Source: Fonticula alba ATCC 38817
Taxonomy: Eukaryota > Protista > Nucleariida
Direction: 5' to 3' (one strand)
DNA length: 34,861 nt
Assembly (NCBI GenBank): GCA_000388065.2
Contig: KB932201.1
The notes below the pieces were generated by a model that saw only the letters and a program-made list of their open reading frames with translations, was not told the origin of the DNA and made no database searches. Shown here piece after piece: positions 4,513 through 25,202 of this stretch (position 1 is the stretch's first letter; every line of letters starts with the position of its first letter). The position numbers were made by a program, and so were the translations under genes.

Positions 4513-6467
4513 ATGTCCTTCTGCCCGCATCTCCTCACTGTGCCGGCCAACCTGGAGATCTCGGTCTCCGATGCGGCGCGGGCCACCGCCCTGAGCTTGC
4601 GAGTTGGCGTGCGTGCTTCTCCTCTCCCCGCACTTGGGCCCGCTCTCCTGCCTTGCACCATGGCGTCCTAATCTCCCGTTGGTCCTCGGCTCCGTCTGCC
4701 TCTTTCCCCGCCTCCTGTCAACAGTCTACCCGTTTTCTATGCCAAAGCAGCAGTCATCCAGCCCGGCTCGGAGGCATGCCCCATGTGTGTCTCTTCTGCC
4801 CCACTCCGGGCTGCATCCATTTTGATGCGCACCAGGCCACCACAGCCGACGCGCTCTGTCCCTGCCTCCGGGATCACAACCAACGCAAGCCCGACCACTT
4901 TCTTTGTGCGACCGGCCGCCCTTGGCCCTTCCCTCGCAAGCNNNNNNNNNNCTATGCTTGCCGGCTGCCAGTCTTGGACATCCGCCGGCGAATTGTCTTC
5001 TGCTTCAAGTGCCAAGACTACCTACACTCGCCACATCAGTATGCCCTATCGGCGGCCATCCAGCAGCCACTGTCTCCGGCGGCGCGGTCAGCCCTGCAAA
5101 TCCTTTGCAAGATCGAGAAGGCCATCTTCATGGCTGACCAGTTGGTCCGGCGCCAGGGGCTGGATCTCTGTGCGTCCATCCCCCGCTCGATCGAGAGGGT
5201 GATCCAGCTTTTGCCAGTAACGCGTGGTTGTTGTTGACACTCGAGCGCGCAGCCTGTCGCGCATCCCCTCCTGCCGGCATGTCGACTGCACTGCCGGCCA
5301 AGCCCCCGGCCTCGGAGTTGCTTCTCCTGTCGCGATATGTCCGGCCATTGGGGCTGCTGCCGGTTTGCTCGACCGGGACCCGGCGCGCGGGTGTGAATCG
5401 CGGCCGATCGACCGCCGGCCCCCCTTCACAGCTTCGAGTGGTGCTGCCACGGCCGTCCGCCGGAAAGGCCGAATCCGGTGGCGGTGGCGGTGGTGGTAGC
5501 GGTGGCGGTGCCACCAGCGGCGGTCGGGTGTTTGTCTCGACCCAGGCCGCCCCGTATGGGGTATACCCCCCGCGGCCGCGTGGGCTGAAGAACCACGGGG
5601 CTACGTGCTATCTGAATTCGGTCCTCCAGGCGGCGGTCATTCACAATCCAGTCATCCGGGAGTTTTTCCTTCAAGATCGACACTCCTGCGGGTTTCGCCG
5701 GGACCGCGCCCCCGGCCGCCCGGCCGACCTGTCCCAACTCACTCGGGTCAAGGGGTTGCCACCGCCCACGGTGGAAGACCAGCGCCAGTGTGCGGCCTGT
5801 GCGTTGGATTGGCTGATCTCACGGGCACATGCGCCGGTTCCCCAGGTGGAGTGTTTTGTGTCGGCGTCCGACATGGCCGCCGGGCGGGGCGGCTTGGGCG
5901 CCGCGGCGGCCGCCATCGGGGGGACGTCCTCCTCCGGCGGCGGCGGCACCAGTGGCGGTGGCGGCCCGAGTGCGGCGCACCCTGGGACCGGGCCCGGCCC
6001 GGCCGGTGAGCGTCTTCTCCCTTCGGGCATCGAGTTAAACACCCTCACTTCGCAGCTTCGGCTGAGTTCGGCCTCTGGCGGCGGGGGCGATGACACCAGT
6101 CGTGTGTTTGCGCTCGACCCGTCCCTGCCGAAGATCGAGTCCCCTCCTGGGGTTTCCATCAAGCGGGAGCAATCTTCGCCGGCTGGTGGTCCGGACTTTC
6201 CGCATCCCCAACGTCCGCGCCCGGCTGAGGGGCTCACCTCGCCGTTGACGCTACCGAGAAACCTGACCGTGTCGCCGGCCTCTTCGGCTTTGTCCACCAA
6301 TTCGCTGGTCTATGTTTTGTGGAAGGCGGCCCCGGCGTTGGCCGGGCACTCGCAGCGCGATGCTCACGAGGCATTCCTGTCTCTCGTGGCCGCGGCGCAC
6401 CGGCACTGCCCGGGATCCTGTATGTAATCTGGTCATCCTCCTCCTGGGGTGGGCCCACACCTGCCTG

Positions 6468-6508
<41 letters not shown>

Positions 6509-7282
6509 ACTGCCAAGCGCTGTTTGTGCCCCGATTGACTTACATCCGGCCCTTGTTTGTGTGTGTGTGTATGTGTGTGTGTGTGTGTGTGTGCGCGCGC
6601 GCGCGGATGTGCATGCGCATGCGCACCTGCACACGCCCGCATTCGTGTCTGTCTCCCCGGCCGACGGTGCCTCTGCGCCGGATCACCGATCACAGCGGTG
6701 TCCTTCCAGCTGACTCCCTCGCAGTGCAATTGCGGCCTCTACCAGTCCTTCAGTGGCATTACCAGCTCCAAGATTACATGTCTTTCATGTGGATCGTCCT
6801 CGACAAGTGCGCATGCCTGCCGTCCTCGCCGGGGTTGCCTGCTCATTCCCGGTTCTAACACCCCTCATCATGTCCATCCTGTTCATCATCACCCAGCTCT
6901 GGAGCCCTTCCTTGACATCAGCGTCGATTTGGCGTCCCCCTCCAGTCCCTCCGGGCATCCCTCCAACGGGGGTTCCCCTCGGTCAGAGCCTTTCCTGTCC
7001 CTGGAGGACTGTCTCAGGGCATACACCGAGCCGGAGGCGCTCGGCCGACCGCGGTGTGGGCACTGTCCAGAACCCTCCACTCGGACGGGCAGCCGCACAG
7101 CCGATGACACCATCCACGGGGGTGGCAGTCTCGGTGCCACCAAGCGCCTCTCCATTCAGACCCTTCCCCAGGTGCTGGCCATCCACCTGAAGGTACACAA
7201 TGTGGATACCCTGTGGGGGCGTGCCTGGTTGTGTGTCCTCTCACCTTCTCATGCTGACCGTCATCCTGGCCCCTTTGCCGGC

Positions 7283-7374
<92 letters not shown>

Positions 7375-8358
7375 TGCACAGCGCTTCTCGCATCCGGCGC
7401 TGCAGCAATTTTCGGCACCCACCAAAGCAGCCAATAAGGTGGCCAACCACTCTGGCAGCGCAAGCTCCTCCCTGGCCCAGGCCGGCGATGGCATGCACTC
7501 TGCCCCCGCTGGGCATTCCCCCTCGTCGGCCTCCTCATCGGCGCCGAGTTCGACTTCCTCATCGGCAGTCACGTCGGCTTCCTCATCGACGGCCTCATTG
7601 CACTCGACGGCCAGCGGATCGCCCGGGACCCACCTGGGGGCCTCGGCCAGTTCCCTTTTCCACGCAGCCAGCATTTCCGGCGGGGGCTCCCCTTCGGATG
7701 CATCGTCGGCCCTGTCGATGCTTGGCCAGTCCATCTCATCGGCCTTCTCGGCGCAGGGAGTCTTTCCACTGCCGAGCTCCGACGGCACCCCCCGCAGGGA
7801 TTGGCCCACGCATGCCAGCCGGCCGTTGGAGGTGTTGCAGGGGATCCCGAAGCAGGAGCTGACGGTCAAGTTCCCCCTGGAGCTCGATACGTCGCCATAC
7901 CTCGACGAGTCGGCCTTTGTCGGTTGCCCGGGCAGCCGGTACGTGGCCTTCTGGCCGTGGGTTTCCTCCTCCCCCTCCCCCCCTGTTGTGTGCTTGCATT
8001 CCCACTGACTCTCTGTTTGCCCTCACTCGGTCGGATGGACATAGGCTGCCGCTTGACCTACGGTCCGAGTCGCTGTATGTTTTGACCGGGGTTGTTGTAC
8101 ATAGCGGGACCTCTGAGAACGGGCATTATGTCTCCTTCTTCCCCTACAGAGGAAAGGTATGCTCCCTCGCGCTGTGCGACGTGTGATCCGTCGGGAAGCC
8201 TTCTTCCGTCGCTGACCTCCCCCCCCCCTCCCCCCATGCCTGCGTGGATGCGCTAGTGGTACAAGGCCAGCGATGTCGATATCGAGCAGGCCTCCATCCA
8301 AGAGGTCCTCGCCGCCAAGGCATACATGCTTTTCTACACCAAAAAGTCCCTCATGTAG
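4513..8358 (+). CDS. Ubiquitin-specific protease, Ubp8/USP22-like (ZnF-UBP + USP domain), multi-exon
   Basis: Starts MSFCPHL (cf. yeast Ubp8 MSICPHI). ZnF-UBP motifs CLFCPTPGC, H..H and FCFKCQDY. Cys box GLKNHGATCYLNSVLQ (Cys codon 5606-5608), then QRDAHEAF, CLSCG, EPFLDISVDL, LEDCLRAYT, LPQVLAIHLK|RF and VKFPLELD. His box YVLTGVVVHSGTSENGHY (His 8124-8126). Last exon WYKASD...AYMLFYTKKSLM* with TAG at 8356-8358. Some 5' exon boundaries are approximate. Confidence 0.88.
6469..6625. repeat. (TG)n microsatellites and a (TG)n(CG)n alternating purine-pyrimidine tract in a USP intron
   Basis: About 19 TG units at 6469-6506, then a second TG run grading into CG repeats at about 6556-6625. Confidence 0.85.
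7316..7374. repeat. 59-nt C homopolymer preceded by (CT)n in a USP intron
   Basis: Counted directly. It ends just before the TGCACAG acceptor. Confidence 0.85.
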
Positions 8359-8669: not shown

Positions 8670-10185
8670 TCAGCAGCCGCAGGCATCCGAGTCCTCGTCG
8701 GCCTGCTCGGTGATGTTGACTACATGCGTGAAAGGGGGGAGTCCGGGGGAGGGGAGACGAAAGTTAATCACTCGCCGGGCGGAGGCCGACAGGCTGGGCG
8801 CAAGGTATGTGGATAGGCGCCACATACCTGTGGTGTTGTTCGCAGCCTGAGCCGGCAGAGGGGCCTGTTCCTGTTCGACATCTGCTGTCTGTGCGCCACC
8901 GGCCGGCTGGCTGACGGCATTGTAGATGGACACAATCAGCTGGTGAAAAGTGAGGTTGATACCAACTCCGGTGCAAGCGCTGGTTTCATGGAAGAGAAGC
9001 CCATGGGCCTTGGCGAAGTCCGACCCACTCTGCGTCGGGACCTGGAGACGTTGGGGAGGGGGGGGGGGAGGGGGGAGATGAAGGGTGAGATGAGGCGTGT
9101 GCAAGTCGGCGGGGCCGTCCCACTCCTGGCACAGGATGGGGCATGCATGCGTCCCAAGATGTACCTTGCGATTGGCCTCAAGATCGATCTTATTCCCGAC
9201 CAGACAAACCACCGTCGCGGGATGGGCATGGGAGCGAAGTAAGGACAGCCACCGGGGAACGCTGTTGAAGGACTCGACCGAGGTGATGTCATAGACGATC
9301 AGGGCTCCACTGAGTGGCAAAAACGTCAGGTGTCTGGGGCTTGTGACTGGGGGAGGGGGGATGGGGGGGGGGGGGGGGGGCAAATGGCAGGAGGAGCGGC
9401 AGAAGGACGCACACGGCGCCGCGGAAGTAGTTACGCGTCAGGGCGGTGAAGCGCTCCTGACCGGCTGGGAGGAGAGCGGGGAGGGGAGAGGGGGGATTGC
9501 GGTCAGACGATGGGAGAGAATGGCAGGCCCGAGGGAGGCGATGCGCGAGCAAAAGCCACACACCTGTGTCCCAGATGTGCACAGTCAGGCGTTTGCCTTC
9601 ATGAAGGATGACCTGCATCGGTGGTGGGGTGGTTAGTATGGTGTTGGATGACCGCGAAGCGGGAGGCCCATCTAACGAGCAGGCGAGGGCACCTTTGTGG
9701 AGAACTCGATGGCCAGTGTGGCCTTGGAGCTTGGGTTAAACTCATCGCGGGAAAACCGGCCGAGGATATTCGACTGCCAGCCGAGGGGACACCGAGGCAA
9801 GGGGCATTGGGTTAGATGTGGCGGCGAGACAGACCGTGCGTCTGAACCGATGGCGCAGTGCATGTGTGTGTGTGTGTGTGTGCGCGCGCGCGCGCATGCA
9901 AGCATCTCCTTCTCCGCTCGCCATTCTCGCTGTCACTTTCTCTCGATCTATAAGTTTGGGTGTGTTTGCATGTACCTTGCCCACATCCGAGTCCCCGCAG
10001 AGAATCACTGGGAGGAAGAATCCCAGCGGAGCAGGGAACGGTTGGTGGCCGGTGGGGGAGACGTTGGGGGAGCAGGGAAGGGATGATGATCGGTGAGGAG
10101 AGGAGCCACAAAAGAGCGGGAGGCATTCACCACAAAACACACCTTTAAACTGGTAGTCATGCGCCACAAAGCCCGAAGACATCAT
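8670..10185 (-). CDS. Rab-family small GTPase, divergent Rab11-like, about 8 coding exons
   Basis: Spliced product MMSSGFVAHDYQFK|VILCGDSDVGK|SNILGRFSRDEFNPSSKATLAIEFSTK|VILHEGKRLTVHIWDT|AGQERFTALTRNYFRGAV|GALIVYDIT...LVGNKIDL...|...FHETSA...|VNITEQADEDSDACGC*. All five G boxes are present and the C-terminus is a CXC prenylation motif. Confidence 0.92.
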
Positions 10186-12006: not shown

Positions 12007-12248
12007 TTCCCAGCTTCTCAGCTTCTCTCCCTCCCCCTCTCTCTCTGTCTATCGCATTGTCTATCCTAGCTCCTGTCTTTGCCTCGCGCTACCTCGCCCT
12101 GTGTCCCATGCCCTTCCAGAGAAAGAGAGCAGGATAAGACAAGACCCACATGGTCGAATATGCATGAACCCTGATGTTGCCATTGCTCGGTAGGGTGCCC
12201 CACCGGAGTGTATTCCTTGAATGTGTGTGCCGACAAAGGCCAGGACAG

Positions 12249-13911
12249 CTACCGACAAGCGTCAGACGACGCGGGCACTGTTTGAACAAGACGCCGGCGC
12301 AAGGCAGCAATGGCCTCGGCTGGCAGGCCGCAGTGCTCTCGAAGGTAGACCTCGGCTCCGCCGAGCTCAGCCAGCGGACCCGACACGAACATGGCCATGG
12401 CCTCCCAGCGGCTGCTACTGAGGGTGAACGCCTCGTGTGGCGAGAGCCCCGAAGACTCCAGCCCGCCATCGGGATTCGGGAGCAGGCGCTCAATGAACGG
12501 CCGACGATCTGACCAGGCGAGGGGCGATGTAGGACAGCCAAAGAGGCCGCCGCCGCGGCCACAGCAGGGCGTCGAGTGAGTGACATATTCCCGGCAGCAT
12601 GCCTGCTGGCATCGGTGTAAAGAGGTATGTGCACATATATATATATATGTATATGTGGTGGGCATGTGCTGCAGGAGCAAGGCGCCAAAGAGGATGATCA
12701 TGCACGCACCCAGGCACACCTCCGTGCGCTGATAGTCACGGCAAATGGCTGCCGGGGAGGCGCCAAGCAGATCCAGCAACAGAGCCGAGGCAACGCCCGT
12801 GCGATCCTTGCCCGCCGTGCAGTGGAAGACCACGGCATAGTGATCGGCCTCCTCCACTGGGAGACCCGCCCGGAGGAGGCCCTGGTCGATGTAGGCATCG
12901 GAGAAGGGTGGCCCAGCGAGGAGGGAGAACAACGCCCGAAAGGCAGCCACGCCATGGCTGAGAATGTCCATATAGCCTGAGGCCACAAAAGAGGCAGCGG
13001 CGGGGAGGGGGGGGGAACATTAGAAGGAAGGGGGAGGGTAAAAGAGGGGAAGGGGAGGGGGGGGGGCCAGTGCGGATGCATGGGTATGTGTGTCCCAGCA
13101 TGGGGGCGCACCGGAAACCATGGAGTTCGTGCACTTGGAATGGGACGCCCAGCGCCGGGAGAAAGATTCAGTAGGATTGCGATCGATGCTCGGATCGGCG
13201 AAGACCGGCGCGTGGAAGTGCACAATGCCCCTGAGGAGACCGTGGCCACACCGTGTGTCGCATGTACCAAGGACAAAAGCAAGAGAGAGAGAGAGAGAGA
13301 CAGGGCCGAACATGAGCAAAGACCCGGGGAACCAAGGACGCAGGGGGAGACAAAGACACGCACGTCCTGGCGAACAGAGGCCCGAGATGGGCATGGTCGC
13401 GATCGAATTCGTACTGACTACGGAGGTCCACAACAGCCCGGACGCGTAGAGCATCATGCAAGTGCTGCAGGGCCTCGGGGCGGACGTCCGAAAAGCCGGC
13501 CGCCCGGAAGACGCGGCCAAATGCAGACACCGTGGCCCGGCGGATGGGCGAGCAATGGATGGTGGGCTGCCGGGCAGACGGGTCGGCACCCGCCAGGGGG
13601 TACCCCCCGAGGTCGCGGAAGTTGTCGACCCCCGACCAGTGGACATGGAACTGGGCCTCATGCCGACTGAGTCCCGGCGGGGGTTCCGGCGTGTTGGACG
13701 CCAGCGTCACCGACAGGGTCGGCACTGGCGACCGGGAAGAGCGGCAGCTGTCCAGCGGGTGAGCGATGCTGGCACGCGCGGCACGCAAAGCCGGCGAAAG
13801 CCAGCCCAGGATCGTGCTGACAACCAGGGGATCTAAGGTGGCCGAGGGGGCAAGGCACAGGAAGGGAGTCAGTGCTGGAGCCGAGGCCGGGAGAATGGGC
13901 CAAACCAAGGG

Positions 13912-14002
<91 letters not shown>

Positions 14003-15904
14003 GCAGCACAGGAGGGACGCCCCGGGCCTCGGTGCGTACCAAAGCCCCGGAAGAGGTGGTCCGCATCGGGGATCAGCCGGAGCGTGTGGACGCCCATCTT
14101 GGCCGGGTGGCCCCGAGCCAGCAGGGCATTGGTGTAGTGCATGGCCTCGGTGGGCAAGACCACCGTGTCTCCAAGCCCGTGCATGGTCAGCGTGTCGACC
14201 CCCGAGGGGATGGCCGAGACTGGGGAACAGACGCCCCGGCGGCGGCGGCGGCGGCGGCGGCGAGGGGGAGGCATGCGCCAGAGGGACCCCGGCGATGGGT
14301 GGTGAGGAGCGAGCAAGCGTATGGCGAGCGAGGGGGAAGCATCCAAAGGGGGCCCGACAAAGCCGGGAAAGCGCACCAGCACGCAAGTTGACATCGGTGG
14401 CGATCAAATCAATTTGGGAGGGGGAGACGATGACAGCCCCCTCGCCACGGATGCGTGAGCGATAGCGCCAGCCGAACCAGCCGCGCCCTTCGGGAGCCGG
14501 GCGCATCCGCGCAACCTCGGCTGCCGTGTGCTTGATGGTGATGTCCCGGTGGTTGAAGCGGCTCCCGAGTGACGCGACAAAGCGCAGCGAGTGCGGTGGC
14601 TTGCGTGCTGCCTGGCGCATGACACACACCCCGCCTGTCGGGTGGCGTCGAGGGATCGAGGGTTGCAACATGGCCGAGGCCAGGCAGGGTCAGAGAGGGA
14701 GAGGCGATGCATGGGAAAGGACAAGGGGTGTCCACAAACACACCTCGAGAGTGGCCAATCAAGCCGACAACGCGCCAGCCATGCCGCTCGGCCGCAGCGA
14801 TCGCGGCCGAGATGTCAATAAAGTCGCCCTAAGAGAGTGGCAGAGGGGCATCGGAGAGGGGGCGAGGCCCGAATGGTGTCAGTTCCCGAAGGTGATCACT
14901 CTTCCCGGCGCAAAGGAGGGAGGCAGGGGATGAAGGCCGACCTCATAGTCTGAGTAGGATGGCAGGCCCGGACTGCGACCGTGTCCGCGAAGGTCGACGC
15001 GCAGGCTGGCCGTCGGGGCGGGCAGCAGACCTGTGAGCAGGTTTCCTGCACCCGCGCACAGCTGCTCGCGCAGCTCGTCCAGTTCCCTGTGAGGAGCGGT
15101 CAAAGCCTCGACCGAGGCGGACACCACCGCCTCGGCCAGGGGCCCGGAGTGGGTGCGGCCAAAGCCGGCCGGGTCGGCCAGGGCCTGCGACAGGAGGGGG
15201 AAAAACAAGTTGTCCCGGTGGCCTGGATGGCGTTTGGGCGGTCAGACAGGAGGGTGGCAGGCGCTCGGAAGGAGAAGGGTCTTGGGCTGCTCCTCCAGGG
15301 GGGGGGGGGGGGAGCAAGCACCCAACATACCGAGCACCCCGTGAACGATGACCACAAGGTCGCGCCCGTGGCCAGCCGGCCAGACATTTGGACTCTGGCC
15401 GATGGAGGCCACGATGTCCGTCAGGTAGGAGGAGGAGGAGGAGGATGAGGAGGGCGAAGCGGAGGGAGAAGGGTCACCGGTGCTCGGGATGCAGAGGGTG
15501 CACGCGAGCTCGTGTGTGGGGACCATGTTGTCGGAGGCGGTCCGCAAATGGTCCGGAATGGCAGTCAAGAGCGAGGCTCGACGAATGGCGGCCCGAACGA
15601 GCGTCGCATCCTCCGAGCTGTCGCCAGATTCAATGTCATCCAGCAGGGCCGCTTCCCCCTGGGGGAGCGACAGAAAGGACACCTCCCGAAGGGAGAGCAC
15701 CGGCCGGTCGGTGGGAGTCCCACCCTCGCCGGCAGCAGCAGAGGGAGTGGCTTCATTCGAGGTAGCGAAGGCGTCGCGTTCAAATTGATCCAGTTCTTCG
15801 GCCGAGGCTCCCGGATACCGAGCAAAGAGAGGTCGCCGGCCCAGGAAGCGCGGGTCGCGCACTGGCACCGTGAGAACCACCTCGGAGCAGCTCGAGACCA
15901 CCAT
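12249..15904 (-). CDS. Fusion protein: N-terminal alpha/beta-fold serine hydrolase + C-terminal PtpB/LipA-type (Y_phosphatase3) cysteine phosphatase
   Basis: Hydrolase motifs in order: LVVIVHG, RVDLRGHGRSPG, nucleophile elbow GHSR|GG (14756-14744, intron after the first base of Gly), MHGLGDTVV (acid) and DADHLF (His). Phosphatase motifs: VDNFRDLGGY, GRVFRAA, VVDLRS, HAPVF, P-loop HCTAGKDRTG (12824-12795) and DYQRT. Stop at 12249-12251. Start codon and some internal boundaries are less certain. Confidence 0.8.
13916..14001. repeat. 86-nt G homopolymer (poly-C on the sense strand) in an intron of the hydrolase-phosphatase gene
   Basis: Counted directly. It lies inside intron 14039-13833. Confidence 0.85.
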
Positions 15905-16573
15905 GATTCAACAGGAGGAGAGAGAGAGAGAGAGAGAGAAGGAGAGGGCGGAGTAGAAGTAGATGGGAGGGGGGAAAGAGGGAGAGACAGAATATATGTG
16001 TGTGGGCGGAGGAGAGAGAGGGGGGGCGGGGGGGGGGGGGGGGGGGGGGAGCGAAGAACGGCCGTACACGTGTGAGGGGTCGGGCGTTTTGGGTGCAATC
16101 TGATGAGCCGGCTCGGTGCATGTGTGTGTGCCACCTCGGCCGAAGGCGTCGACTGCCCGAGGCTCTTCCTCCGGCCAGCCAGTTGTGACACAGGGGGCAG
16201 GGGGGGGGGGGGGGGCGACCGGAGAACGGGGACAAACACGCTCTCGCGTAAGCCCGCTCGGCCCCCGTCCCGCGCCCCCCGCCATCCATTTGGCCAACGA
16301 TCGGGCCGATCACAACGATCCCGTGCCTGTGTGGTAAGTTTTTGTCAGATGACGCGCCCGGCGCTCCGCATCCGCCCGAGAATCCCCCGGTCGCCGGGCG
16401 ACTTCCATTTGTGTGTGTGTGTGTGTGTCCCTGCCCTGGCCCCCCGCCCCCGTTCCCCCGTCCCCCCCCCCCTCCCCATTGGACTTTGCCCGGGCTTCCT
16501 GCTGGGTCCGTTCAAGCACCTTCCGGTGCGCATCCACACTTTCCGAGTATCCCTGCACACATCCACCCAGGAC

Positions 16574-17656
16574 ATGGAGGAGGAGCGAGCGGCTGGTTGT
16601 TTGCTTTCCCGCGAGGCTGACGTCGCCCCTCCGGGGCAGAGTGCCTCGGCCGGCCCGGGAGCGCGAAGAAAACACCCGCCGCTGTCCGGTACTAGTTGCC
16701 GGCAACACCTCCACCCATAGATCCCTTGCCTCCTCGTCACGCGCCGCCCCTCCCCCCCCTTCCCCCCTCCCTTCGAAAGTCNNNNNNNNNNNNNNNNNNN
16801 NNNNNNNNNNNNNNNNNNNNNNNNNNNNNNNNNNNNNNNNNNNNNNNCCCCCCCGGCCTCTTTTGCTGACCTCGCTTCGCAGCCCCTCGTCGTTTCCGCC
16901 TGATGGATGAGCTTGAGCGCGGCGAGAAGGCCGCCTCTTTCCAGTCCTATAGCTATGGCCTCAGTGACGCTGAGGACATCACCCTGACCAACTGGCACGC
17001 CACCATCATCGGCCCGAACGGCGTACGTCGTATCGTGCCTTCCCTGCCTCCCTGTGCCGGGTCCCCGGCTGACTGATCTCCGCCCCTCTGCCTCTGCCTC
17101 CCCCTCCGCCGCACCCAGACCACCTTCGACAACCGCATCTACTCGCTGTCGATTGTCTGCGGCCCGGAGTATCCGAACAGCGCCCCGGTGGTTTCCTTCT
17201 CCACCATGATCAATGCTTCCTTCGTTGGGCCTCGCGGCGAGGTGCGACCTTTTTCCCGCCTGGTTGGCCGGGACCGTCTTTTTTTTTTTTGCCCCCCTTG
17301 AAACCCCGCCTCTCCCTCCCCCTTCTAACACTCCTCTCCTTCTTGTTCTGGCGAGCCAGGTTGATCTGTCCAAGCTGCCTGCCCTGGGCAAGTGGGCCCC
17401 CGAGCACACCATCGAGTCTGTGCTGAAGGCCATCATCGAGTGCGTCTTCTTGCCTCTGCCCCTGGCGCGAGTGTCCCCTCCTCCTTGCCTTCCCCCTCGC
17501 TCATTTGCCCCTCCTCCCCCCCCCCCCCTGCAGTGCCCCTTTTCACCACTCACCTCTGATATCTCGCTTTTTCCCCCCACTTCCACCTTCGGCAGGGAGA
17601 TGAAGAGCCGCAGCAACCGCTCGAACAAGCAGCCCGCCGAGTCGGCCGTCTATTAG
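16574..17656 (+). CDS. MMS2: Ubiquitin-conjugating enzyme variant Mms2/Uev1 (UBE2V)
   Basis: Firm exons: 16883-17022 (PRRFRLMDELERGEK...SYGLSDAEDITLTNWHATIIGP), 17119-17241 (FDNRIYSLSIVCGPEYPNSAP), 17360 to about 17439, and about 17596-17656. No catalytic Cys, as expected for a UEV. First exon 16574-16688 is tentative: phase-compatible, but its intron contains an N-gap. Confidence 0.9.
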
Positions 17657-18092: not shown

Positions 18093-21000
18093 TTACTTCT
18101 GGCGGTTGGTGCGCTGCTTTTCGCCGCTCTCAACCACGCGAATGTCGGTCAGCAGACCCTGGAGGGGAGTGGATCGCCAAGGAAGTCAGCTATAGTGCAC
18201 CAGGAAAGGAGCTGGCACTGGGGCGGAAAAAAAGAAAAAGAAAAAAGAAGAAGGCCGGGCGGCAGGGGGATGGAGATAAAGAGAGAGAGAGAGAGAGAGA
18301 GAGAGACATGATGGGGTACCTTGCGCCGGCGCACGCGCTGCATGTGAACCAGGGCCTGGTTCTCGGTGTCGGCCTTCTCGCCAAAGTGCTCGTATTCTTC
18401 CTGGGTGGTGGGCTTCCAGAAGGGGTCCGTGTCGAGCAGCTCGAAGCCACTGAACACCAACATCGGGTTGGCCACGCCACTGGTACGCGACCGGATCTCC
18501 GAGGCGAAGCCGAAACTCTCGGCCACCGGCAGGATGGCCCGGATGATGAAGGAGTCGGTGCCAGGGCGCATCTGCTCGGAGAGAATACGCCCGTGGCAGC
18601 GGCCGATGACACTGTAAACACGGCCGAGGACCTCAGCTGGGCACGGGCAAAAGGACCCGACACAATCGGGGGGGGGGGGGGGGGGAATTGTCCGAGCCAA
18701 AACGCACAGGTGGCCTGAATGACGCAAGAGTAAATGGCCAACATCAGGCGCGGCCCGCAGGAGAGGAAGGCCTCACGACAGGCCTCCCGGACGGTGGAGA
18801 TCAACTGGCCACTGGTGAAGTTCGACGCCCGGACAGCCGGCGCGTCACTTCCACCGACGGCCGAGATGCCGTTGGCATCCTCTTCACCACCGGCGGCATC
18901 CGTGTTCATGATGACCTCATCCAGGATGAAGGCCACGCCATAGAGCGGTTCCTCGCAGAGGGGCCCACTGGCGCAGGTCATCTGGAAGCCGCTGATGATC
19001 GAGGGATCAAACTGGCCGTGGTAGGCCCCGGAGGGGGTGGCAGCAGCCGAGGGCGCCGGGGCGGCATTGGCGCCGGCCCAAGCACAGGTCACCTTGTGAC
19101 CGGGGACCGTGGAAATCAGCAAGTTGGTTCCAGTCCGCGAGGGGCCGATGCACATGACACTGCAGAGGGGGGTCAGAGCGAGCGAGGCACCGAAGGGGAA
19201 AAGGAGGACGAGCGGACCGAGAGCAGGCCACGCCGGCCGTCGAGCCCCAAGTCAAGGTAAGAGCACGCACCGGTCGAAGTAGTCCGCCCACGGACCACCG
19301 GCAGCCTTGAAGGCACCGCGGATCTTCTCCTCAATCGGCGTGCTGAGGTCCTCGCCGTCTGTTGGTTCGGTGCCAGGGGGGCGGGGAAGAAAAAAAAAAG
19401 TTGTCAGAAGGGCAAGGGACAAATGGATGGGCGGGGATCCGCCAACAGGCAGGGGGGCAGACCAGCGACGCACCCGCCGCCCCGTCCAGGCCTTCGGCAT
19501 GGCGACTGCGTGCATTCAGGGCCCGGGTAATGTCCTCCGGCAGCGGGACCGCCCGCAGGACGACGGTTACCTGGCCGTCGTTGGTGCTGTACCGGACGAC
19601 ATTCGACCGCCGGACCATGACCGAGCAGGTGTGGATCCGGCTGGCAGCCGGCTCATGCTCCGGGTCATCCATGTCCGTAATGTGCGCGGCCGCCTCGCCG
19701 GCAGGGTAGAAGTCATTCGGCGCCTGACGGCCGATGACCGTCTCACGGTATGGCACCAGCGGCGGGGACTGGTCGATGTTGATGCCGCGAGCAAACTGCT
19801 CGCGCAGGTCCACCATGCACCGCTCCAGATGCAATTCGCCGGTCGTGGCAAGCACATGCTCGCCGGTGTCCTGGACATACACCTCGATGGCAGGATCCGC
19901 ACGGGCCAACATCCGCAGGCCCTCAATGAGCTTGGGCATGTCGGCTGCAGGGCCGACAGCGGGGACCATGTGAAACCGGCAGGTCACCACACCGGCAGTC
20001 GGAAGGAGGGGCGCGTGGGGATACAAAGAGAGGGGGGCCAGGAGAGAGAGGGAGAGAGTCAGAAAAGGCGGGGAAAGCGCGTGGGGGTACAAAGAGAGGG
20101 GGACCAGGAGAGAGAGAGAGAGAGAGTCAGAAAAGACGGGGAAAGGGGGCGCCCGGTGTCCGGCGGGACGCACGCAGGTAGGATGGCTCCAGGGCCACGC
20201 GAACAATCGGGCTCACTTGCATATGCAGGGCCGCCAGCGAGGGACAGGCACGGGAGGAACTCAAGGTAGCCGACTTGAGCACTTGCCCGGCGATGCCGAT
20301 GATGCCCACCAAGTTGCCGGCCGGGGCCTCGTCCAGCTCCTCCAATTCCCGGCCCATGACCAGGAAGAGTCGGGAGATGACTACCCGCTCGGCCTGGTGG
20401 TGGCCATCAGGCGAGCTGTCGGCGGCATTGTCACCATCCGCCGCCAGGGCCACGCGCGGGTCGTACTTCGGGCCGAGGACATAAATCTCCTGCCCAGCAC
20501 GAAGAGTCCCGCTGAATACGCGGCCAAAGCCCACGAGGACGTCGCCATTCGGGCCACACTGGCCGACAAGCTTCTCCTCGGCTTCTTGCAAGCGTCGAGC
20601 CTCGGCCTCCTGCTGCTGGGCCTTGATGTCATCCAGGCTGACGGTCTGCTCGTTCTCGGCCTGCGGCAGTATCGGGACGGCAGGGGGTCAGTGGTGAGCA
20701 CAGCACGCGGTGGCAAAGTACAGGGAGCAGGACCGGCAGGGAGGAGGAGGAGGAGGGGGAGGGGGGGGGGGACAGAGAGCCCGCATGAATGTCACGCACC
20801 CCGGGGTTATCGGCAGCGGCAGCGGCCAGGAGCGCCGCGCGCTGGCGATTGCGCTCACGCAACTGAGCCGCCGTGAGGATGACCCGCCGGCGATCTGGCA
20901 GTGACGACCGCGGCAGCGACAGGACCTTGGCAATGTACACAACGCAAGGGGCATCGGGCGATTGGGTGCATGCCTCGATCGAGGAAATGACCTCGAGCGA

Positions 21001-23178
21001 CTCGGCGGGCAGCTGCATGGCCACCATGTGAGTGAGCGTGTCTCGGTGGCCCAAAGGAAGCCGGAGGAGGGAGGGGGAAAGTGGATGGAAAAAAGGGGAA
21101 GAAGGAGACACGACTGCCCCGGCCAGATGACGTACGGTCTTCTTCATGCGGTTGAAGGCACTCTGCGAGCCGGAGACAATGACCGGGGTCCGGTCATTCT
21201 GCGAACTGGCCGGAGAGGGGAGGCTCTGCACGACCATGCCTGCGTGGGATCCGATGCCCAAACGACATCCAGGAGGGCATTCGTGTCAGTACTTGAAGGC
21301 GTGCCCTCTCTCTCTCTCTCTCTCTCTCAAGATCAGGAGACCGTGGGGGGGGGGGGGGAGGGGAGAAAAGCAACGCGCAAATGCGGCAGTCGGGGGAGAC
21401 ACCACGGACCAAGCACAGCACGCGACAGGGGCAGCCACTGGCCCATGATGCTCTGCAGCACAAAGCGCGTGTCCTTGGAGGCCAAGTCCGCCGGGTTCAC
21501 TCGCAGCGAGAGGGCCTTGACGATCTTCTCCAGCTTCGGCTGATCATAGGACACGATGGAGGCATTGTACACGGCCCAAAGGTTCTCCAGGACAAAGTTG
21601 ACGAACATGGGCTTCAGGCGGTTGCCGGCCTGGCTGCGACCCACCACGCGCTTCTTCTTCGAGTCGAGGTACCAGTCGCCCCAGAGGGTGCGTCGCAGGA
21701 GGTCCACATTGATACCAAGCATGCCGGAATAGATCCGTGCAAAGTCATCAATGCTACAAGGGGGAAGGGGGAGGCGCGAGTCGGCGGCGGGGGNNNNNNN
21801 NNNNNNNNNNNNNNNNNNNNNNNNNNNNNNNNNNNNNNNNNNNNNNNNNNNNNNNNNNNNNNNNNNNNNNNNNNNNNNNNNNNNNNNNNNNNNNNNNNNN
21901 NNNNNNNNNNNNNNNNNNNNNNNNNNNNNNNNNNNNNNNNNNNNNNNNNNNNNNNNNNNNNNNNNNNNNNNNNNNNNNNNNNNNNNNNNNNNNNNNNNNN
22001 NNNNNNNNNNNNNNNNNNNNNNNNNNNNNNNNNNNNNNNNNNNNNNNNNNNNNNNNNNNNNNNNNNNNNNNNNNNNNNNNNNNNNNNNNNNNNNNNNNNN
22101 NNNNNNNNNNNNNNNNNNNNNNNNNNNNNNNNNNNNNNNNNNNNNNNNNNNNNNNNNNNNNNNNNNNNNNNNNNNNNNNNNNNNNNNNNNNNNNNNNNNN
22201 NNNNNNNNNNNNNNNNNNNNNNNNNNNNNNNNNNNNNNNNNNNTGTATGTATGTATGTGTGTGTGCGTGTGCGTGTGCGTGTGCGTGTGCGTGTGAGAAA
22301 GAGAGCAGGGAGCAAAAAGTGCGCGCCAGGGCTCGGCGAGGTCGCGAGTGGGGCCCCCGGCTAGAGAGGGAGCGCACCTCCACATCGGCCATGCTCTCCT
22401 CGTCGGACGCGGCGAGATCGCCACGGAAAAGCATGCCCATCACGGCATTAGCCTGCTCGACGAGGCGCTGGAGGTGGTAGTGCGCCTCATCGGGGGTCAT
22501 CTGGAGCTCGAGGATCAGCCGATCGATCTTGTTGAGAACCAAGATCGGCTTGACCTGCTCGACCCAAGCCTGTCGGAGGACGGTGAAAGTCTGTCCAAAG
22601 AAGAAGGGGGCGAGAGGGGGGCGGGGGGGGGGGGAAGCAGAGCCGAAGGGCGTAAGCCACACTGAGAGAGAGAAAGAGAGGGGGCCTGCCGCGCGAGATT
22701 GCGACGGGGAGGGGCGGACAAAAGCAAGGAAGGGCGGAGCGAGGGGAGGCGAGGCGAGGCGACTGAGGGGAAGACGGATGTGCGTGCAAGGGCGCACCTG
22801 CGTGGAGACCCCCTCCACGGCGTCGATCAGCACCAGACCGCCGTCGCACAGGCGCACGGCGGTCGACACCTCGCTGTTGAAGTCCACGTGCCCCGGCGAA
22901 TCGACCAGATTGATCAGGTACTCGTCCTCCGGAGCCCGGCGGAAGAGCAGCGAAATGGCCGACGACATCATGGTAATGCCGCGCTGCTGTTCGTCCGGGC
23001 GGTCGTCCAGGAAGCGCAGCTTGCCGGCCATGCGGGCCGAGATGATGCCATTCGAGGCCAGCAGGGAGTCTGAGAGGGTGGTCTTGCCGTGATCGATGTG
23101 GGCCAGGATGCAGATGTTTCGGATGCGGTCCGGCTGCGCCTGCAGGCCGGCCAGCTGATCCTTGGTAACCATGGACAT
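18093..23178 (-). CDS. EFL1: Elongation factor-like GTPase 1 (Efl1/Ria1), multi-exon
   Basis: MSMVTKDQL...[129 protein letters not shown] and [25 protein letters not shown]. Last exon 18158-18093 is [21 protein letters not shown]. These motifs fit EFL1 better than eEF2. Confidence 0.95.
20011..20145. repeat. Imperfect tandem duplication (2 copies of about 67 nt) in an EFL1 intron
   Basis: gcgcgtgggg(a/g)tacaaagagaggggg...ccaggagagagag...agagtcagaaaag(g/a)cggggaaa starts at 20011 and again at 20077. Confidence 0.85.
21794..22243. other. Assembly gap (N-run) inside EFL1
   Basis: N characters. The other gaps are 4942-4951, 16782-16847, 25011-25080, 32062-32761 and 33805-34259. Most abut poly-G/C or microsatellite runs. 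Confidence 0.99.
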
Positions 23179-24802
23179 GTTGGCACGCGTGCAACGGAGG
23201 AAGAGGGGGGGGGGGGCGAGATGGAGGGAAAGCGGAGAGGGAGCAGGAGGGGGAAGGGCAGAGAACAAGAGAGAGAGGGAGAGGGATAGGTTGGGTAGGG
23301 GGGCCCAGAGAGCTGATCAGAGGGGGAGAGAAGAGGGCTGGCCAGGGCCAGACGGACTCGCCTGCGAAAATGCCGCTCAAATAGCCCTCCTCCAGCCGAG
23401 CGATCTGGGTCTGGCTGGCGGCCGGCATCGCCAGTGTGCCCCGCGACCTGGAGGGGGGGGGGGGGGGAGGCCAGGCTCGACTGGCCGCCTGCCCTCGCCC
23501 CCGGTCCCCCCTCCGCCCTCCTGGTGTTGGTATTTTGGCCACCGCCTCGGCCGGTCCCCTGTCTGGGGGGAAGGAAGATCGACGCGGAGCCCTGGATGGC
23601 GTCTGGGCATCTCGCCAGCCCTTGGGTGTTTCCCACTGGCCGACCATGCAGGCTGTGGTGGCGGTGGCCAATCTAGGGGTCGGGCGGCCCTTGCGCTGGC
23701 GGCTGCGGGTCATGCGGTGATGCAATCGGCGGGGAGATGTAGCGTGATCCCGGGCGCATGTGATTGCATAAGGGTATTCCACGCAGCATTCAGGCACGCA
23801 GGCTTCGCGAGCTGACAACCTACCTCGGGGCATTCCCGCGTTCCGGGGTGCGGTGGTGGTCGTCTGTCAGTCCAGGCCACGCCGGGGGGGGGGGGGGGGG
23901 CAGGCGCGGGCAGAAAAACAAGGCCCATCAACCAGGGCGCGGGGCTCTGGCCTGCGCCGGGCCAGGACCCGTTTCTTGTGCCTGGAAAAAAATGTGAGAC
24001 AACGGCACGGCCGGCGGGGCGGGGGTGCCCCGCCGCGAGGCCCTGTGAAAAAGGGTCGTTTAGGGCGCCCCAGCGTCCGGGGATTGGGATAGGCCAATCT
24101 TCCCATGGAGCCGGCCGGCGCGTGGGGCCTGCCCTTCCTAAACTCTCGTGCTACTTTTCGTGGCGGTTCTGAGCAGATATGCCGGCCACCGGGCTATTTC
24201 GGCGTGTGAACAGTTGTTGCACTAGATCCCCGATGCCCTGGCCCCCGCGCCGCCCGCTGGTCCGGGGAAATTCACCAAGCGACGGCCGGTTCACCGGTAG
24301 CCCGGGCCGGTGCCGCGGCCTGGGGGGCATTTTTTTCCTCCGGCGCCCACACTACGCTGGCCCGCAGGGGCCGGGTGGGGTGAGGAGGATCTAGCACCCG
24401 GGTCCCTTAGGTCTCCGGTCCCGGGTCGCCACTTCCTCCGGCCGGAGGCCTCCGGGGGAAGGGGGGGAGTATGCGGGCTGAAAGAGCCATGGTTGCCGAG
24501 GATGGGGCCGTGTCCCGAGCGGCATGCGCAAGTCCGACTGCCCATGCGCCTGCCCTTGTTCGTGGTTGTGCCAGGGCCGGGCACAATCTCATTCCATTGG
24601 CGGGCGAGTTTTTTCCCGTGAGTTTGTGTGCTGCTGCTACACGGCAACGTTCCTGCCTCTAGCGCGAGAGTCCCGCCACACCGAAGCGAGGCCAGCCAGC
24701 CAGGGGGCCCATGTTGCTTGGGGGCCACTGCTCCCTGCCGAGCACAGGGTCCCTGGCTGAGAAGAAGATCTCTCATTTTCAGGCGTCTCTCGGCTCCTCA
24801 CC

Positions 24803-24845
<43 letters not shown>

Positions 24846-25202
24846 CATGTGTGTATGCGTGTGTGCGTGTGTGTGGGCACGTACAGAACACCGGGATAGC
24901 CTGGCTGTGAGCCGGCAGCCTCGCAGCACATGTTTGCCTGTCGTTCGAAGAGATATGGGTCCCAGCTTCTAGCTGGTAGAGATTCTTACCACTGGAAGGG
25001 AGCGGGGGGGNNNNNNNNNNNNNNNNNNNNNNNNNNNNNNNNNNNNNNNNNNNNNNNNNNNNNNNNNNNNNNNNNNNNNNCCCCCCCACTCTCCCCCGCC
25101 CGTTCCCTTCCCCCGCCTTCATCTTTGCTTGTTCATTCTCTCGCTTTTCTCTGTCAAGAGCCAAGCGCCATCTCGATTTCCGTCTCGATCACATCCCCGG
25201 AG

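What the first reader, a model, noticed from the sequence alone, without database searches (positions are those of the whole stretch)
12249..15904. Alpha/beta-hydrolase fused in one reading frame to a PtpB/LipA-type phosphatase
Seen in sequence: one exon starting at 13832 runs without a stop from the last hydrolase helix (DPLVVSTILGWL) through a short linker into the phosphatase signature VDNFRDLGGY, so the fusion does not depend on my splice model. Both active sites look intact: Ser in GHSRG, Asp in HGLGDTVV, His in DADHLF, and the P-loop HCTAGKDRTG. Established knowledge: HCxxGKDR(T/A)G is the signature of the Mycobacterium MptpB / Listeria LipA group of atypical protein and phosphoinositide phosphatases, which are normally single-domain. 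Inference: this may be a bifunctional deacylase/lipase plus lipid phosphatase acting on one substrate class, such as phosphoinositides or prey-derived bacterial lipids. I do not recall this architecture being characterised.
Basis: partly seen in the sequence, partly recalled or inferred. Interest (0 to 1): 0.75.

Follow-up and report, generated by a model that had tools for sequence, protein, structure and literature searches.

The report
Esterase–lipid-phosphatase fusion gene, conserved in fungi
This is a real, expressed Fonticula alba gene that joins a serine esterase to an MptpB-type cysteine phosphatase in one protein; the same fusion is widespread in fungi, and I found no study of it, so it is an old uncharacterised enzyme family rather than a one-off.

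Summary
The minus-strand gene at 15904..12249 has nine exons and encodes 830 aa. It is Fonticula alba H696_00330 (XP_009492452.1), annotated as hypothetical. Intron-free cDNA contigs from four runs cross all eight GT..AG introns. One 2556-nt contig spans the whole gene. Exon 6 (13832..13364) runs without a stop from the last hydrolase helix into the phosphatase.

On the database protein, Pfam gives Y_phosphatase3 (4e-40), Abhydrolase_1 and Hydrolase_4, all above cut-off. The residues HG, Ser312 (GHSRG), Asp417, His454, NFRD and HCTAGKDRTG are invariant across seven fused homologues.

The architecture is not unique. It occurs in Ogataea, Brettanomyces, Dipodascopsis and Calcarisporiella, and in at least three Atlas clusters of 52 to 72 members from Ascomycota and Mucoromycota. 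In two yeast-like contigs it is a single intron-less ORF.

The phosphatase half branches at the base of a fungal clade, apart from bacterial relatives. This points to vertical descent from a fusion older than the Fonticula/fungi split, not to recent bacterial import. The best 80 bacterial loci carry the phosphatase half only.

I found no paper describing the fusion, and the founding paper on this phosphatase family calls its members single-domain. Substrates are inferred, not shown. Interest is moderate.

The parts
12249..15904 (-). Whole coding region of Fonticula alba H696_00330: 9 exons, 2493 nt, 830 aa plus stop. Exons in window coordinates: 15331-15904, 14942-15222, 14744-14828, 14377-14634, 14040-14219, 13364-13832, 13112-13230, 12710-12976, 12249-12508.
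   Evidence: Spliced cDNA contigs with GT..AG introns on the minus strand. Database protein P0001 (830 aa) is collinear with these exons.
12170..12248 (-). 3' untranslated region covered by cDNA contigs.
   Evidence: Contigs reach 12170-12179 (table 8).
15398..15904 (-). N-terminal extension of about 169 aa. It is low-complexity and Ser/Pro-rich, has no Pfam match, and is absent from the fungal homologues.
   Evidence: alignment A1.
13786..15397 (-). Alpha/beta-hydrolase domain, about aa 170-475, spread over exons 1 to 6. It includes a Fonticula-specific insertion at about aa 205-262.
   Evidence: Abhydrolase_1 and Hydrolase_4 score above cut-off on P0001. Profile A2 hits cinnamoyl esterases and an MHETase-like enzyme at 1e-22 to 1e-25. 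The fold matches feruloyl and chlorogenic acid esterases and monoacylglycerol lipases.
15338..15343 (-). His188-Gly189, the oxyanion-hole HG motif.
   Evidence: Read directly from the sequence. Invariant in alignment A1.
14748..14750 (-). Ser312 codon, the nucleophile in GHSRG.
   Evidence: invariant H311 S312 R313 G314.
14167..14169 (-). Asp417 codon, the triad acid in HGLGDTVV.
   Evidence: invariant.
14056..14058 (-). His454 codon, the triad base in DADHLF.
   Evidence: invariant.
13833..14039 (-). Intron 5: 207 nt, holds a poly-C run of about 100 nt, is stop-free and in frame.
   Evidence: Skipped in the contigs of all four runs. ORF 13168..14394 reads through it.
13364..13832 (-). Exon 6, the fusion exon: last hydrolase helix, linker and the first ~95 aa of the phosphatase in one open frame.
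   Evidence: PF13350 at 3.8e-10 on this exon alone.
13642..13785 (-). Inter-domain linker, about aa 476-523. The motif WLSP...R...R is shared with the fungal fusions. It carries a 28-aa Fonticula insertion and is predicted to be partly disordered.
   Evidence: Alignment A1, R479 and R493 invariant. pLDDT below 50 for model residues 321-350.
12285..13641 (-). Y_phosphatase3 (ALP, MptpB-like) domain, aa 524-819, spread over exons 6 to 9.
   Evidence: PF13350 at 4.3e-40. Sequence matches to PDB 8dhi and 1ywf. Foldseek matches to 2oz5 and 8dhj with target TM-scores of 0.71-0.78.
13612..13623 (-). NFRD motif, aa 530-533.
   Evidence: invariant.
12795..12824 (-). P-loop HCTAGKDRTG, aa 707-716: catalytic Cys708, Lys712, Asp713 and Arg714.
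   Evidence: H, C, G, K, D, R, T, G invariant. Residue roles are taken from PMC3091653.

Best explanation
The gene encodes a single soluble 830-aa protein. It is the Fonticula member of an old family, shared with fungi, of two-enzyme fusion proteins. The N-terminal half is a Ser312-Asp417-His454 carboxylesterase of the Hydrolase_4, cinnamoyl-esterase/monoacylglycerol-lipase-like group. The C-terminal half is a Cys708-based atypical lipid phosphatase of the MptpB/LipA group. Its P-loop has the same composition as the Thr-at-position-2 loops of Listeria Lmo1800 and Leishmania LM1. Both active sites have stayed intact since before Fonticula and fungi diverged, so both activities are probably used. 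The most likely mode of action is inferred, not shown. The phosphatase would remove a monoester phosphate from mono-phosphorylated phosphoinositides, PI(3,5)P2 or related phospho-substrates. The fused esterase would either cleave an acyl ester on the same class of lipid-like molecule or provide the hydrophobic-substrate or membrane-binding module that stand-alone ALPs lack. Shown: the gene structure, the transcript, the domain identities, the residue conservation, and the taxonomic spread and branching order. Inferred: substrates, coupling between the domains and cellular location.
For: Spliced contigs from 4 runs (2 samples, 1 study) cross all 8 introns, and one 2556-nt contig spans 12177-15895. 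P0001 is H696_00330, 830 aa, and is collinear with the exons. Both domains score above the Pfam cut-offs. The same architecture occurs in Brettanomyces, Dipodascopsis, Ogataea and Calcarisporiella proteins and in two unnamed proteins. It is an intron-less single ORF in two yeast-like contigs with shared neighbours. A metagenomic relative that had been called as separate ORFs aligns over both halves in one stretch. Three Atlas clusters of 52, 72 and 57 members, 98-100% eukaryotic, carry PF13350 plus hydrolase families. All catalytic residues of both halves, and two linker arginines, are invariant in 7 sequences that are only 27-32% identical. In the rooted tree Fonticula is basal to a fungal clade, followed by a chytrid fragment, then the Mucoromycota fusion, then Dikarya (taxa). 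The gene is single-copy in the genome. In the AF2 model both domains fold (pLDDT 74, pTM 0.71) and match MptpB and feruloyl or chlorogenic acid esterases. ALP biochemistry and P-loop residue roles come from PMC3091653.
Against: There is no biochemical or genetic data for any member of the fused family. The esterase's nearest solved relatives act on aromatic esters and monoacylglycerols, not phospholipids. Characterised ALPs are promiscuous and also act on pTyr, pNPP and even phytate, so the lipid reading is not forced. The linker is long and predicted to be disordered in Fonticula, so the domains may not pack together. I could not inspect inter-domain geometry, and the domain-pair prediction was not run. 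The RNA evidence is assembled contigs from one study, and the 5' end is not covered.
Confidence: 0.55

Rival explanations
1. The two enzymes act on different, chemically unrelated substrates. One example would be small aromatic or short-chain esters for one domain and inositol phosphates or other soluble phosphoesters for the other. On this view the fusion serves only co-expression or co-localisation.
For: The closest solved esterases are cinnamoyl, feruloyl or chlorogenic acid esterases and an MHETase-like enzyme. An ALP from soil, Pho16B, is a promiscuous phytase. The linker is predicted to be flexible.
Against: Linker residues (WLSP, two invariant Arg) are conserved across the family, which suggests more than a passive tether. 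No signal peptide or membrane segment is visible in any member, which argues against an extracellular scavenging role. The fusion has been kept across very long divergence.
Confidence: 0.27
2. The protein acts on proteins. The phosphatase would work as a pTyr/pSer phosphatase, and the hydrolase as a thioesterase or esterase on the same protein targets, for example in deacylation.
For: Characterised ALPs dephosphorylate pTyr peptides well. Alpha/beta-hydrolases include protein thioesterases; this is general knowledge and was not tested here.
Against: The P-loop Lys and Asp tied to phosphoinositide activity are conserved. The hydrolase profile hits small-molecule and lipid esterases, and no acyl-protein thioesterase is among its listed matches.
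Confidence: 0.1
3. The fusion is a recent acquisition from bacteria, such as prey, or an independent fusion event in Fonticula.
For: ALPs are mostly bacterial. Fonticula eats bacteria; this is general knowledge.
Against: The gene has eight spliceosomal introns and host-like GC content. The phosphatase half groups with fungal sequences, apart from Paenibacillus and Pseudoroseicyclus relatives. Fungal fusions share the junction motif. The 80 best bacterial loci match the phosphatase half only.
Confidence: 0.04
4. The fusion is an artefact of gene modelling or assembly, with two neighbouring genes wrongly merged.
For: None beyond the general risk in intron-rich, GC-rich genomes.
Against: One exon carries both domain ends in an open frame. 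Spliced contigs cross it in four runs. Yeast orthologues are uninterrupted ORFs.
Confidence: 0.02

Closest known systems
Mycobacterium tuberculosis MptpB (Rv0153c; PDB 1YWF, 2OZ5)
   Same: Same Pfam family, PF13350. Same fold (Foldseek E 4.7e-10, target TM-score 0.71). Same extended P-loop HCxxGKDRTG with the catalytic Cys, Lys, Asp and Arg.
   Different: MptpB is a single-domain secreted bacterial effector with Phe at P-loop position 2 and mycobacterial insertions. The Fonticula protein has Thr at that position, is intracellular by appearance, and carries an N-terminal esterase domain. Sequence similarity is low (23.5 bits on the P-loop exon).
Listeria monocytogenes Lmo1800 (LipA) and Leishmania major LM1, the characterised ALPs
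   Same: The P-loop composition is the same, with Thr at position 2. These enzymes hydrolyse PI3P, PI4P and PI5P and pTyr; Lmo1800 also hydrolyses PI(3,5)P2. None acts on PI(4,5)P2 or PIP3. That is the profile I would predict here.
   Different: They are described as phosphatase domain only. No esterase partner is known for them.
Clostridioides difficile protein tyrosine phosphatase (PDB 8DHI, 8DHJ)
   Same: It is the best sequence match among solved structures (2.4e-7 on exon 8 alone) and has the best target TM-score, 0.78.
   Different: It is a single-domain bacterial protein of 249 aa.
Cinnamoyl, feruloyl and chlorogenic acid esterases (LJ0536 3PF8, Est1E 2WTM, 8SKM, 7XRH), the MHETase-like 9PJB, and bacterial monoacylglycerol lipases
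   Same: The hydrolase-half profile matches them at 5e-25 to 1e-10. The matches share HGxxGxK...RFDFRGxGxS, a GxSxG nucleophile elbow, and the order Ser, Asp, His. The fold matches with target TM-scores up to 0.73.
   Different: They are stand-alone enzymes of 250-280 aa. The Fonticula domain has GHSRG, a 58-aa insertion and a C-terminal phosphatase. Substrate-pocket residues were not compared.
Uncharacterised fungal orthologues: Ogataea parapolymorpha HPODL_04782, Brettanomyces bruxellensis BRETT_000889, and proteins of Dipodascopsis tothii and Calcarisporiella thermophila
   Same: Same two-domain order, same junction motif and all catalytic residues, at 27-32% identity over the full length.
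   Different: They are compact, 543-614 aa. At least two unnamed yeast-like homologues have no introns. They lack the Fonticula N-terminal extension and its insertions. All are annotated as hypothetical or by domain name only.

Membership tests
Atypical lipid phosphatases (ALP; Beresford et al. 2010) / Pfam Y_phosphatase3 | Extended P-loop signature HCxxGKDR[TA]G | tested here: met
   HCTAGKDRTG at aa 707-716 (window 12795-12824). It is invariant in 7 fused homologues. The signature definition comes from PMC6409689 and PMC3091653.
Atypical lipid phosphatases (ALP; Beresford et al. 2010) / Pfam Y_phosphatase3 | PF13350 profile match above the curated cut-off over the whole domain | tested here: met
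   138.6 bits against a cut-off of 22.2, covering profile positions 2-239 of 240.
Atypical lipid phosphatases (ALP; Beresford et al. 2010) / Pfam Y_phosphatase3 | MptpB-like fold | tested here: met
   The AF2 model (phosphatase half mostly pLDDT 80-98) matches 2oz5, 1ywf and 8dhj as the top Foldseek hits.
Atypical lipid phosphatases (ALP; Beresford et al. 2010) / Pfam Y_phosphatase3 | Domain organisation: phosphatase domain only, as the family was described | tested here: not met
   An N-terminal alpha/beta-hydrolase is fused in the same polypeptide. This departs from the published description. That is a descriptive trait rather than a catalytic criterion.
Atypical lipid phosphatases (ALP; Beresford et al. 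2010) / Pfam Y_phosphatase3 | Phosphatase activity on phosphoinositides and pTyr | not testable with these tools
   This needs recombinant enzyme assays.
Alpha/beta-hydrolase fold, Hydrolase_4/Abhydrolase_1 (S33-like esterases) | Profile match above the curated cut-off | tested here: met
   Abhydrolase_1 scores 35.2 bits (cut-off 25.8) and Hydrolase_4 scores 30.9 bits (cut-off 27) on P0001. Single exons alone were below threshold.
Alpha/beta-hydrolase fold, Hydrolase_4/Abhydrolase_1 (S33-like esterases) | Catalytic triad in canonical order (GxSxG nucleophile, Asp, His) plus the HG oxyanion motif | tested here: met
   HG188-189, GHS312RG, D417 and H454 are all invariant in A1 and A2. They align with the corresponding motifs of 9pjb and 3pf8.
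Alpha/beta-hydrolase fold, Hydrolase_4/Abhydrolase_1 (S33-like esterases) | Alpha/beta-hydrolase fold | tested here: met
   Foldseek hits to 8skm, 7xrh, 2wtm, 3pfb and monoacylglycerol lipases, with target TM-scores of 0.54-0.73.
Cinnamoyl/feruloyl esterase subgroup (LJ0536, Est1E) | Hydroxycinnamate-binding pocket and cap insertion specific for aromatic esters | not tested
   Only overall profile and fold similarity were shown. I therefore do not file the domain as a feruloyl esterase.

The most novel reading that the evidence does not exclude
The esterase and the ALP phosphatase work in sequence on one lipid molecule. For example, they could deacylate and dephosphorylate PI-monophosphates or lyso-phosphoinositides. 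This would define an undescribed phosphoinositide-disposal route conserved from Fonticula to yeasts, and would reveal the physiological substrate class of eukaryotic ALPs.
Probability: 0.17. Interest if true: 0.7.

Novelty: new variant of a known kind. Interest (0 to 1): 0.42.

Why it matters
ALPs are studied almost only as bacterial and Leishmania virulence factors. What they do in free-living eukaryotes is unknown, and the founding paper describes them as lacking any partner domain. A fusion to a catalytically intact esterase, kept since before fungi and Fonticula diverged, gives a concrete and testable clue to the native substrate: something that carries both an ester and a phosphomonoester, most simply a lipid. 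It also provides tractable test organisms, since Ogataea and Brettanomyces have compact orthologues. The value is as a functional lead for an uncharacterised fungal enzyme family, not as a new kind of system.

Tried and rejected
1. Word-index protein searches found nothing useful. The first used the fusion exon region and the second the hydrolase cap exon. The third used alignment A1 and returned only the gene's own protein, because low-complexity words swamped the candidate list. These blanks say nothing about relatives.

2. An Atlas feature search with the 408-aa genomic ORF gave no usable hit. The same tool with the compact homologue P0108 worked.

3. Single hydrolase exons against Pfam and PDB were below threshold. 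The domain became significant only on the database protein and on the family profile.

4. Complex prediction on the two halves was NOT FOLDED for policy reasons. It gives no evidence either way on whether the domains pack together.

5. The AU test on the 106-row tree did not finish. I replaced it with a 45-row careful tree.

6. The second PF13350-like hit in the genome (C3, locus L003) is a PFA-DSP/Siw14-type phosphatase, not a second ALP.

Exons were searched singly by reference, and the full-length analyses used the database protein P0001 returned.

8. A peroxisomal -SKL ending is present only in the Calcarisporiella protein, so I rejected it as a family feature.

9. NCBIfam gave only sub-threshold hits.

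10. The search of earlier findings returned only notes on neighbouring genes, so none is used here.
Full report
**What is in the sequence**

The window is GC-rich eukaryotic DNA, about 61-72% GC around the gene. It lies on contig C1 of a 31.3-Mb assembly. On the minus strand an ATG at 15904 follows an in-frame TGA two codons upstream. It opens a reading frame that continues, exon by exon, to a stop codon ending at 12249.

These are VVIVHG, LRVDLRGHGRS, GHSRG, HGLGDTVV, DADHLF, DPLVVSTILGWL, VDNFRDLGGY, DLRS and HCTAGKDRTG. ORF 13168..14394 is open from the HGLGD strand to well past NFRD, even through the poly-C intron. Pfam finds a Peptidase_S9-like hydrolase C-terminus and the start of Y_phosphatase3 in that one ORF. 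The in-frame junction is therefore a direct property of the DNA.

**Transcript evidence**

Four small 2012 runs (two samples, one study) hold 50-60% of the sampled words of 12200-16000. That is close to the exonic share of the stretch. Their assembled contigs were laid on 12100-16050. They skip eight segments, each bounded by CT..AC on the plus strand, which is GT..AG on the minus strand. Intron-free contigs with such boundaries can only come from spliced RNA, although the runs are not labelled as RNA.

One contig of 2556 nt covers 12177-15895 with all introns removed. The coding exons are:
- 15904..15331
- 15222..14942
- 14828..14744
- 14634..14377
- 14219..14040
- 13832..13364
- 13230..13112
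- 12976..12710
- 12508..12249

Together they make 2493 nt, or 830 codons plus the stop. There are two caveats. These are contigs from one study, and the 5' UTR is not covered.

Exons were searched one at a time by reference.

**Identity**

An exhaustive HMMER search with ORF 12249..12986 returned an 830-aa protein, P0001, at 4.8e-102. It is Fonticula alba H696_00330, also XP_009492452.1 and A0A058ZFM1, annotated as 'hypothetical protein'. It is collinear with the exons above.

On P0001, Pfam gives three matches, all above the curated cut-offs:
- Y_phosphatase3 at aa 524-819, 4.3e-40
- Abhydrolase_1 at aa 267-341, 1.4e-8
- Hydrolase_4 at aa 264-331, 2.2e-7

The gene is single-copy. The only other PF13350-like hit in the genome is a PFA-DSP/Siw14-type phosphatase. 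The neighbouring genes look unrelated to it. They are a UCH protease, a Ras-family GTPase, an EF-2-like GTPase and a Sec14-like protein.

**The fusion is not unique**

Among the 150 best phosphatase relatives, six other proteins of 543-614 aa have the same order, hydrolase followed by Y_phosphatase3. Four are named:
- Brettanomyces bruxellensis
- Dipodascopsis tothii
- Ogataea species
- Calcarisporiella thermophila (the matching Atlas cluster is mainly Mucoromycota)

The two unnamed ones are uninterrupted ORFs of 561 and 549 codons on yeast-like contigs. Both sit between a Nab6-like gene and an AMPK1_CBM gene.

A seventh relative, P0149, had been called as a 278-aa phosphatase. It lies directly downstream of hydrolase fragments on the same strand. 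The Calcarisporiella protein aligns to that locus from residue 48 to 535 in one stretch. It is therefore a fusion that a prokaryotic gene caller split.

The chytrid sequence P0109 starts 8 nt from a contig end, so its architecture is unknown.

The ESM Atlas holds at least three clusters in which PF13350 co-occurs with Abhydrolase_1 or Hydrolase_4. They have 52, 72 and 57 members, are 98-100% eukaryotic, and come mostly from Ascomycota and Mucoromycota.

In contrast, the 80 best of at least 580 bacterial and archaeal loci match only the phosphatase half. Other long bacterial relatives are tandem duplicates or are fused to SLH, Metallophos or SAM_HAT_C domains.

**Conservation**

The seven fused proteins are only 27-32% identical to the Fonticula protein. 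Even so, the following are invariant:
- Hydrolase half: H188-G189, H193, R266/D268/R270/G273/S275 (the RxDxRGxGxS motif), H311-S312-R313-G314, G414/D417 and H454.
- Linker: R479 and R493.
- Phosphatase half: N530-F531-R532-D533, D595/R597/E601, and H707-C708 with G711 to G716.

So the full Ser-Asp-His triad with its oxyanion motif, and the full ALP P-loop, have been kept in every lineage. The junction itself carries conserved residues (WLSP...R...R). This argues for one fusion event rather than several.

Fonticula adds three things: a 169-aa low-complexity N-terminus, a ~58-aa insertion after the HG strand and a 28-aa insertion in the linker. All three are exonic in the cDNA contigs.

**Phylogeny**

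I built a careful IQ-TREE of 45 phosphatase domains, rooted on sequences that include Paenibacillus and Pseudoroseicyclus proteins. It separates a 35-member clade with 95/71 support. The named members of that clade are all fungal, apart from Fonticula.

Within the clade the branching order is as follows:
- Fonticula comes first.
- The chytrid fragment comes next.
- The Calcarisporiella fusion with P0149 follows.
- Last is a starred clade (97/96) with the remaining members, among them the named Basidiomycota and Ascomycota single-domain forms. It also contains a 98/94 clade of yeast fusions.

This order resembles the species tree. Every early branch whose architecture can be read is fused. The simplest reading is therefore a fusion present before Fonticula and fungi split, followed by loss of the hydrolase half in some Dikarya lineages. 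This is an inference.

**What each half resembles**

A profile of the seven hydrolase halves hits several solved enzymes:
- MHETase-like 9PJB at 4.9e-25
- Lactobacillus cinnamoyl esterase LJ0536 at 5.6e-22
- chlorogenic acid esterases
- Est1E
- bacterial monoacylglycerol lipases at about 1e-10

I made an AlphaFold2 model of aa 165-830 with 38 aligned sequences. It has mean pLDDT 74.4 and pTM 0.71. The insertions and the linker are below 50. Foldseek's best matches for the phosphatase half are MptpB (2OZ5, 1YWF) and the C. difficile PTP (8DHJ). For the hydrolase half they are feruloyl and chlorogenic acid esterases, Est1E, PET46 and monoacylglycerol lipases.

No member shows a signal-peptide-like N-terminus. 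The only strongly hydrophobic 19-mer is the buried helix after the P-loop. The proteins therefore look soluble and intracellular. This rests on inspection, not on a dedicated predictor.

**How it probably works**

Beresford et al. 2010 (PMC3091653) showed several things about ALPs:
- ALPs with HCxxGKDR use the Cys as nucleophile.
- The P-loop Asp is needed for catalysis.
- The P-loop Lys is needed for PI(3,5)P2 activity.
- Loops without a Lys at position 2 act on PI3P, PI4P, PI5P and pTyr. MptpB and Lmo1800 also act on PI(3,5)P2.
- Such loops do not act on PI(4,5)P2 or PIP3.
- The tested enzymes with this kind of loop are MptpB (Phe at position 2) and Lmo1800, Lmo1935 and LM1 (Thr at position 2).

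The Fonticula loop, HCTAGKDRTG, has the Thr-at-position-2 form. I therefore predict a phosphatase of that profile, joined to a working carboxylesterase.

The same paper notes that ALPs lack lipid-binding modules. A fused lipid or aryl esterase could supply the hydrophobic-substrate binding, or it could process the acyl part of the same molecule.

My rough odds are:
- a real single polypeptide with two competent sites: 0.95
- one ancient fusion: 0.8
- lipid or phosphoinositide-related substrates: about 0.4
- both sites acting on one molecule: about 0.17

The main rival is two unrelated activities that are merely co-expressed (0.27). A protein-directed role is less likely (0.1). Recent bacterial origin (0.04) and artefact (0.02) are disfavoured by the evidence above.

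**Comparison and novelty**

The phosphatase half passes every sequence and fold test for ALP/Y_phosphatase3 membership. It departs from the published 'phosphatase domain only' description. The hydrolase half is a bona fide Hydrolase_4-type alpha/beta-hydrolase. I do not file it as a feruloyl esterase, because the substrate pocket was not examined.

Full-text searches found no description of the fusion. The terms were the Pfam name and accession, locus tags of five members, 'atypical lipid phosphatase', and MptpB with fungal terms. The library lacks many subscription papers, so absence is not proven.

The architecture is visible in public databases under automatic names. What is new is the recognition of it as a conserved, catalytically intact bifunctional family. 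I rate it a new variant of a known kind, of moderate interest.

Noticed in passing
window 13833-14039 and 12509-12709: Introns 5 (207 nt, with a poly-C run of about 100 nt) and 8 (201 nt, with a TA-rich microsatellite) are both multiples of three and stop-free in frame. Retaining either one would keep the reading frame. In intron 5 it would add a long poly-proline stretch. No retained-intron contig was seen, but repeats were skipped by the read tool.
   Followed up: partly
L003 (G000:C3:3263332-3266460): The only other PF13350-like hit in the genome is a PFA-DSP (Siw14/Oca-type, Y_phosphatase2-like) gene with the motif NFALVTPGVYRSGFP. It is not a second ALP.
   Followed up: partly
window 5228-8008 (+), 8670-9383 (-), 18190-23268 (-), 24930-27392 (+): The neighbouring genes are a UCH-type ubiquitin hydrolase, a Ras-family GTPase, an EF-2/EF-G-like GTPase and a CRAL/TRIO (Sec14-like) protein. 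I saw no link to the fusion gene.
   Followed up: no
window 4942-4951, 16782-16847, 21794-22243, 25011-25080, 32062-32762, 33805-34259: Runs of N, 1752 bases in all. These are assembly gaps or withheld stretches. The low GC value for 32001-33000 in the composition table is due to one of them.
   Followed up: yes
L092:2269-3837: This is a eukaryotic contig from a bioreactor metagenome. It carries a hydrolase-ALP fusion that was called as three separate ORFs in two frames. That suggests small introns or frameshifts. It shows that 'single-domain' relatives in metagenome-derived protein sets can be split fusions.
   Followed up: partly
P0002, P0003, P0006, P0012, P0017, P0021, P0045, P0126 (no window coordinates): Many of the closest non-fungal relatives are tandem double Y_phosphatase3 proteins. 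Others are joined to SLH, Metallophos or SAM_HAT_C domains. Domain duplication and fusion are therefore common in this family outside fungi.
   Followed up: partly
P0115 C-terminus: The Calcarisporiella orthologue ends in -SKL, a canonical peroxisomal targeting tripeptide. None of the other six fused proteins does.
   Followed up: no
window 12562 and 12868: All four runs show loose ends at 12562 and 12868. They come from a contig that fits only short pieces of this stretch and continues into unrelated sequence. It is probably a chance or repeat match, but this remains unexplained.
   Followed up: no
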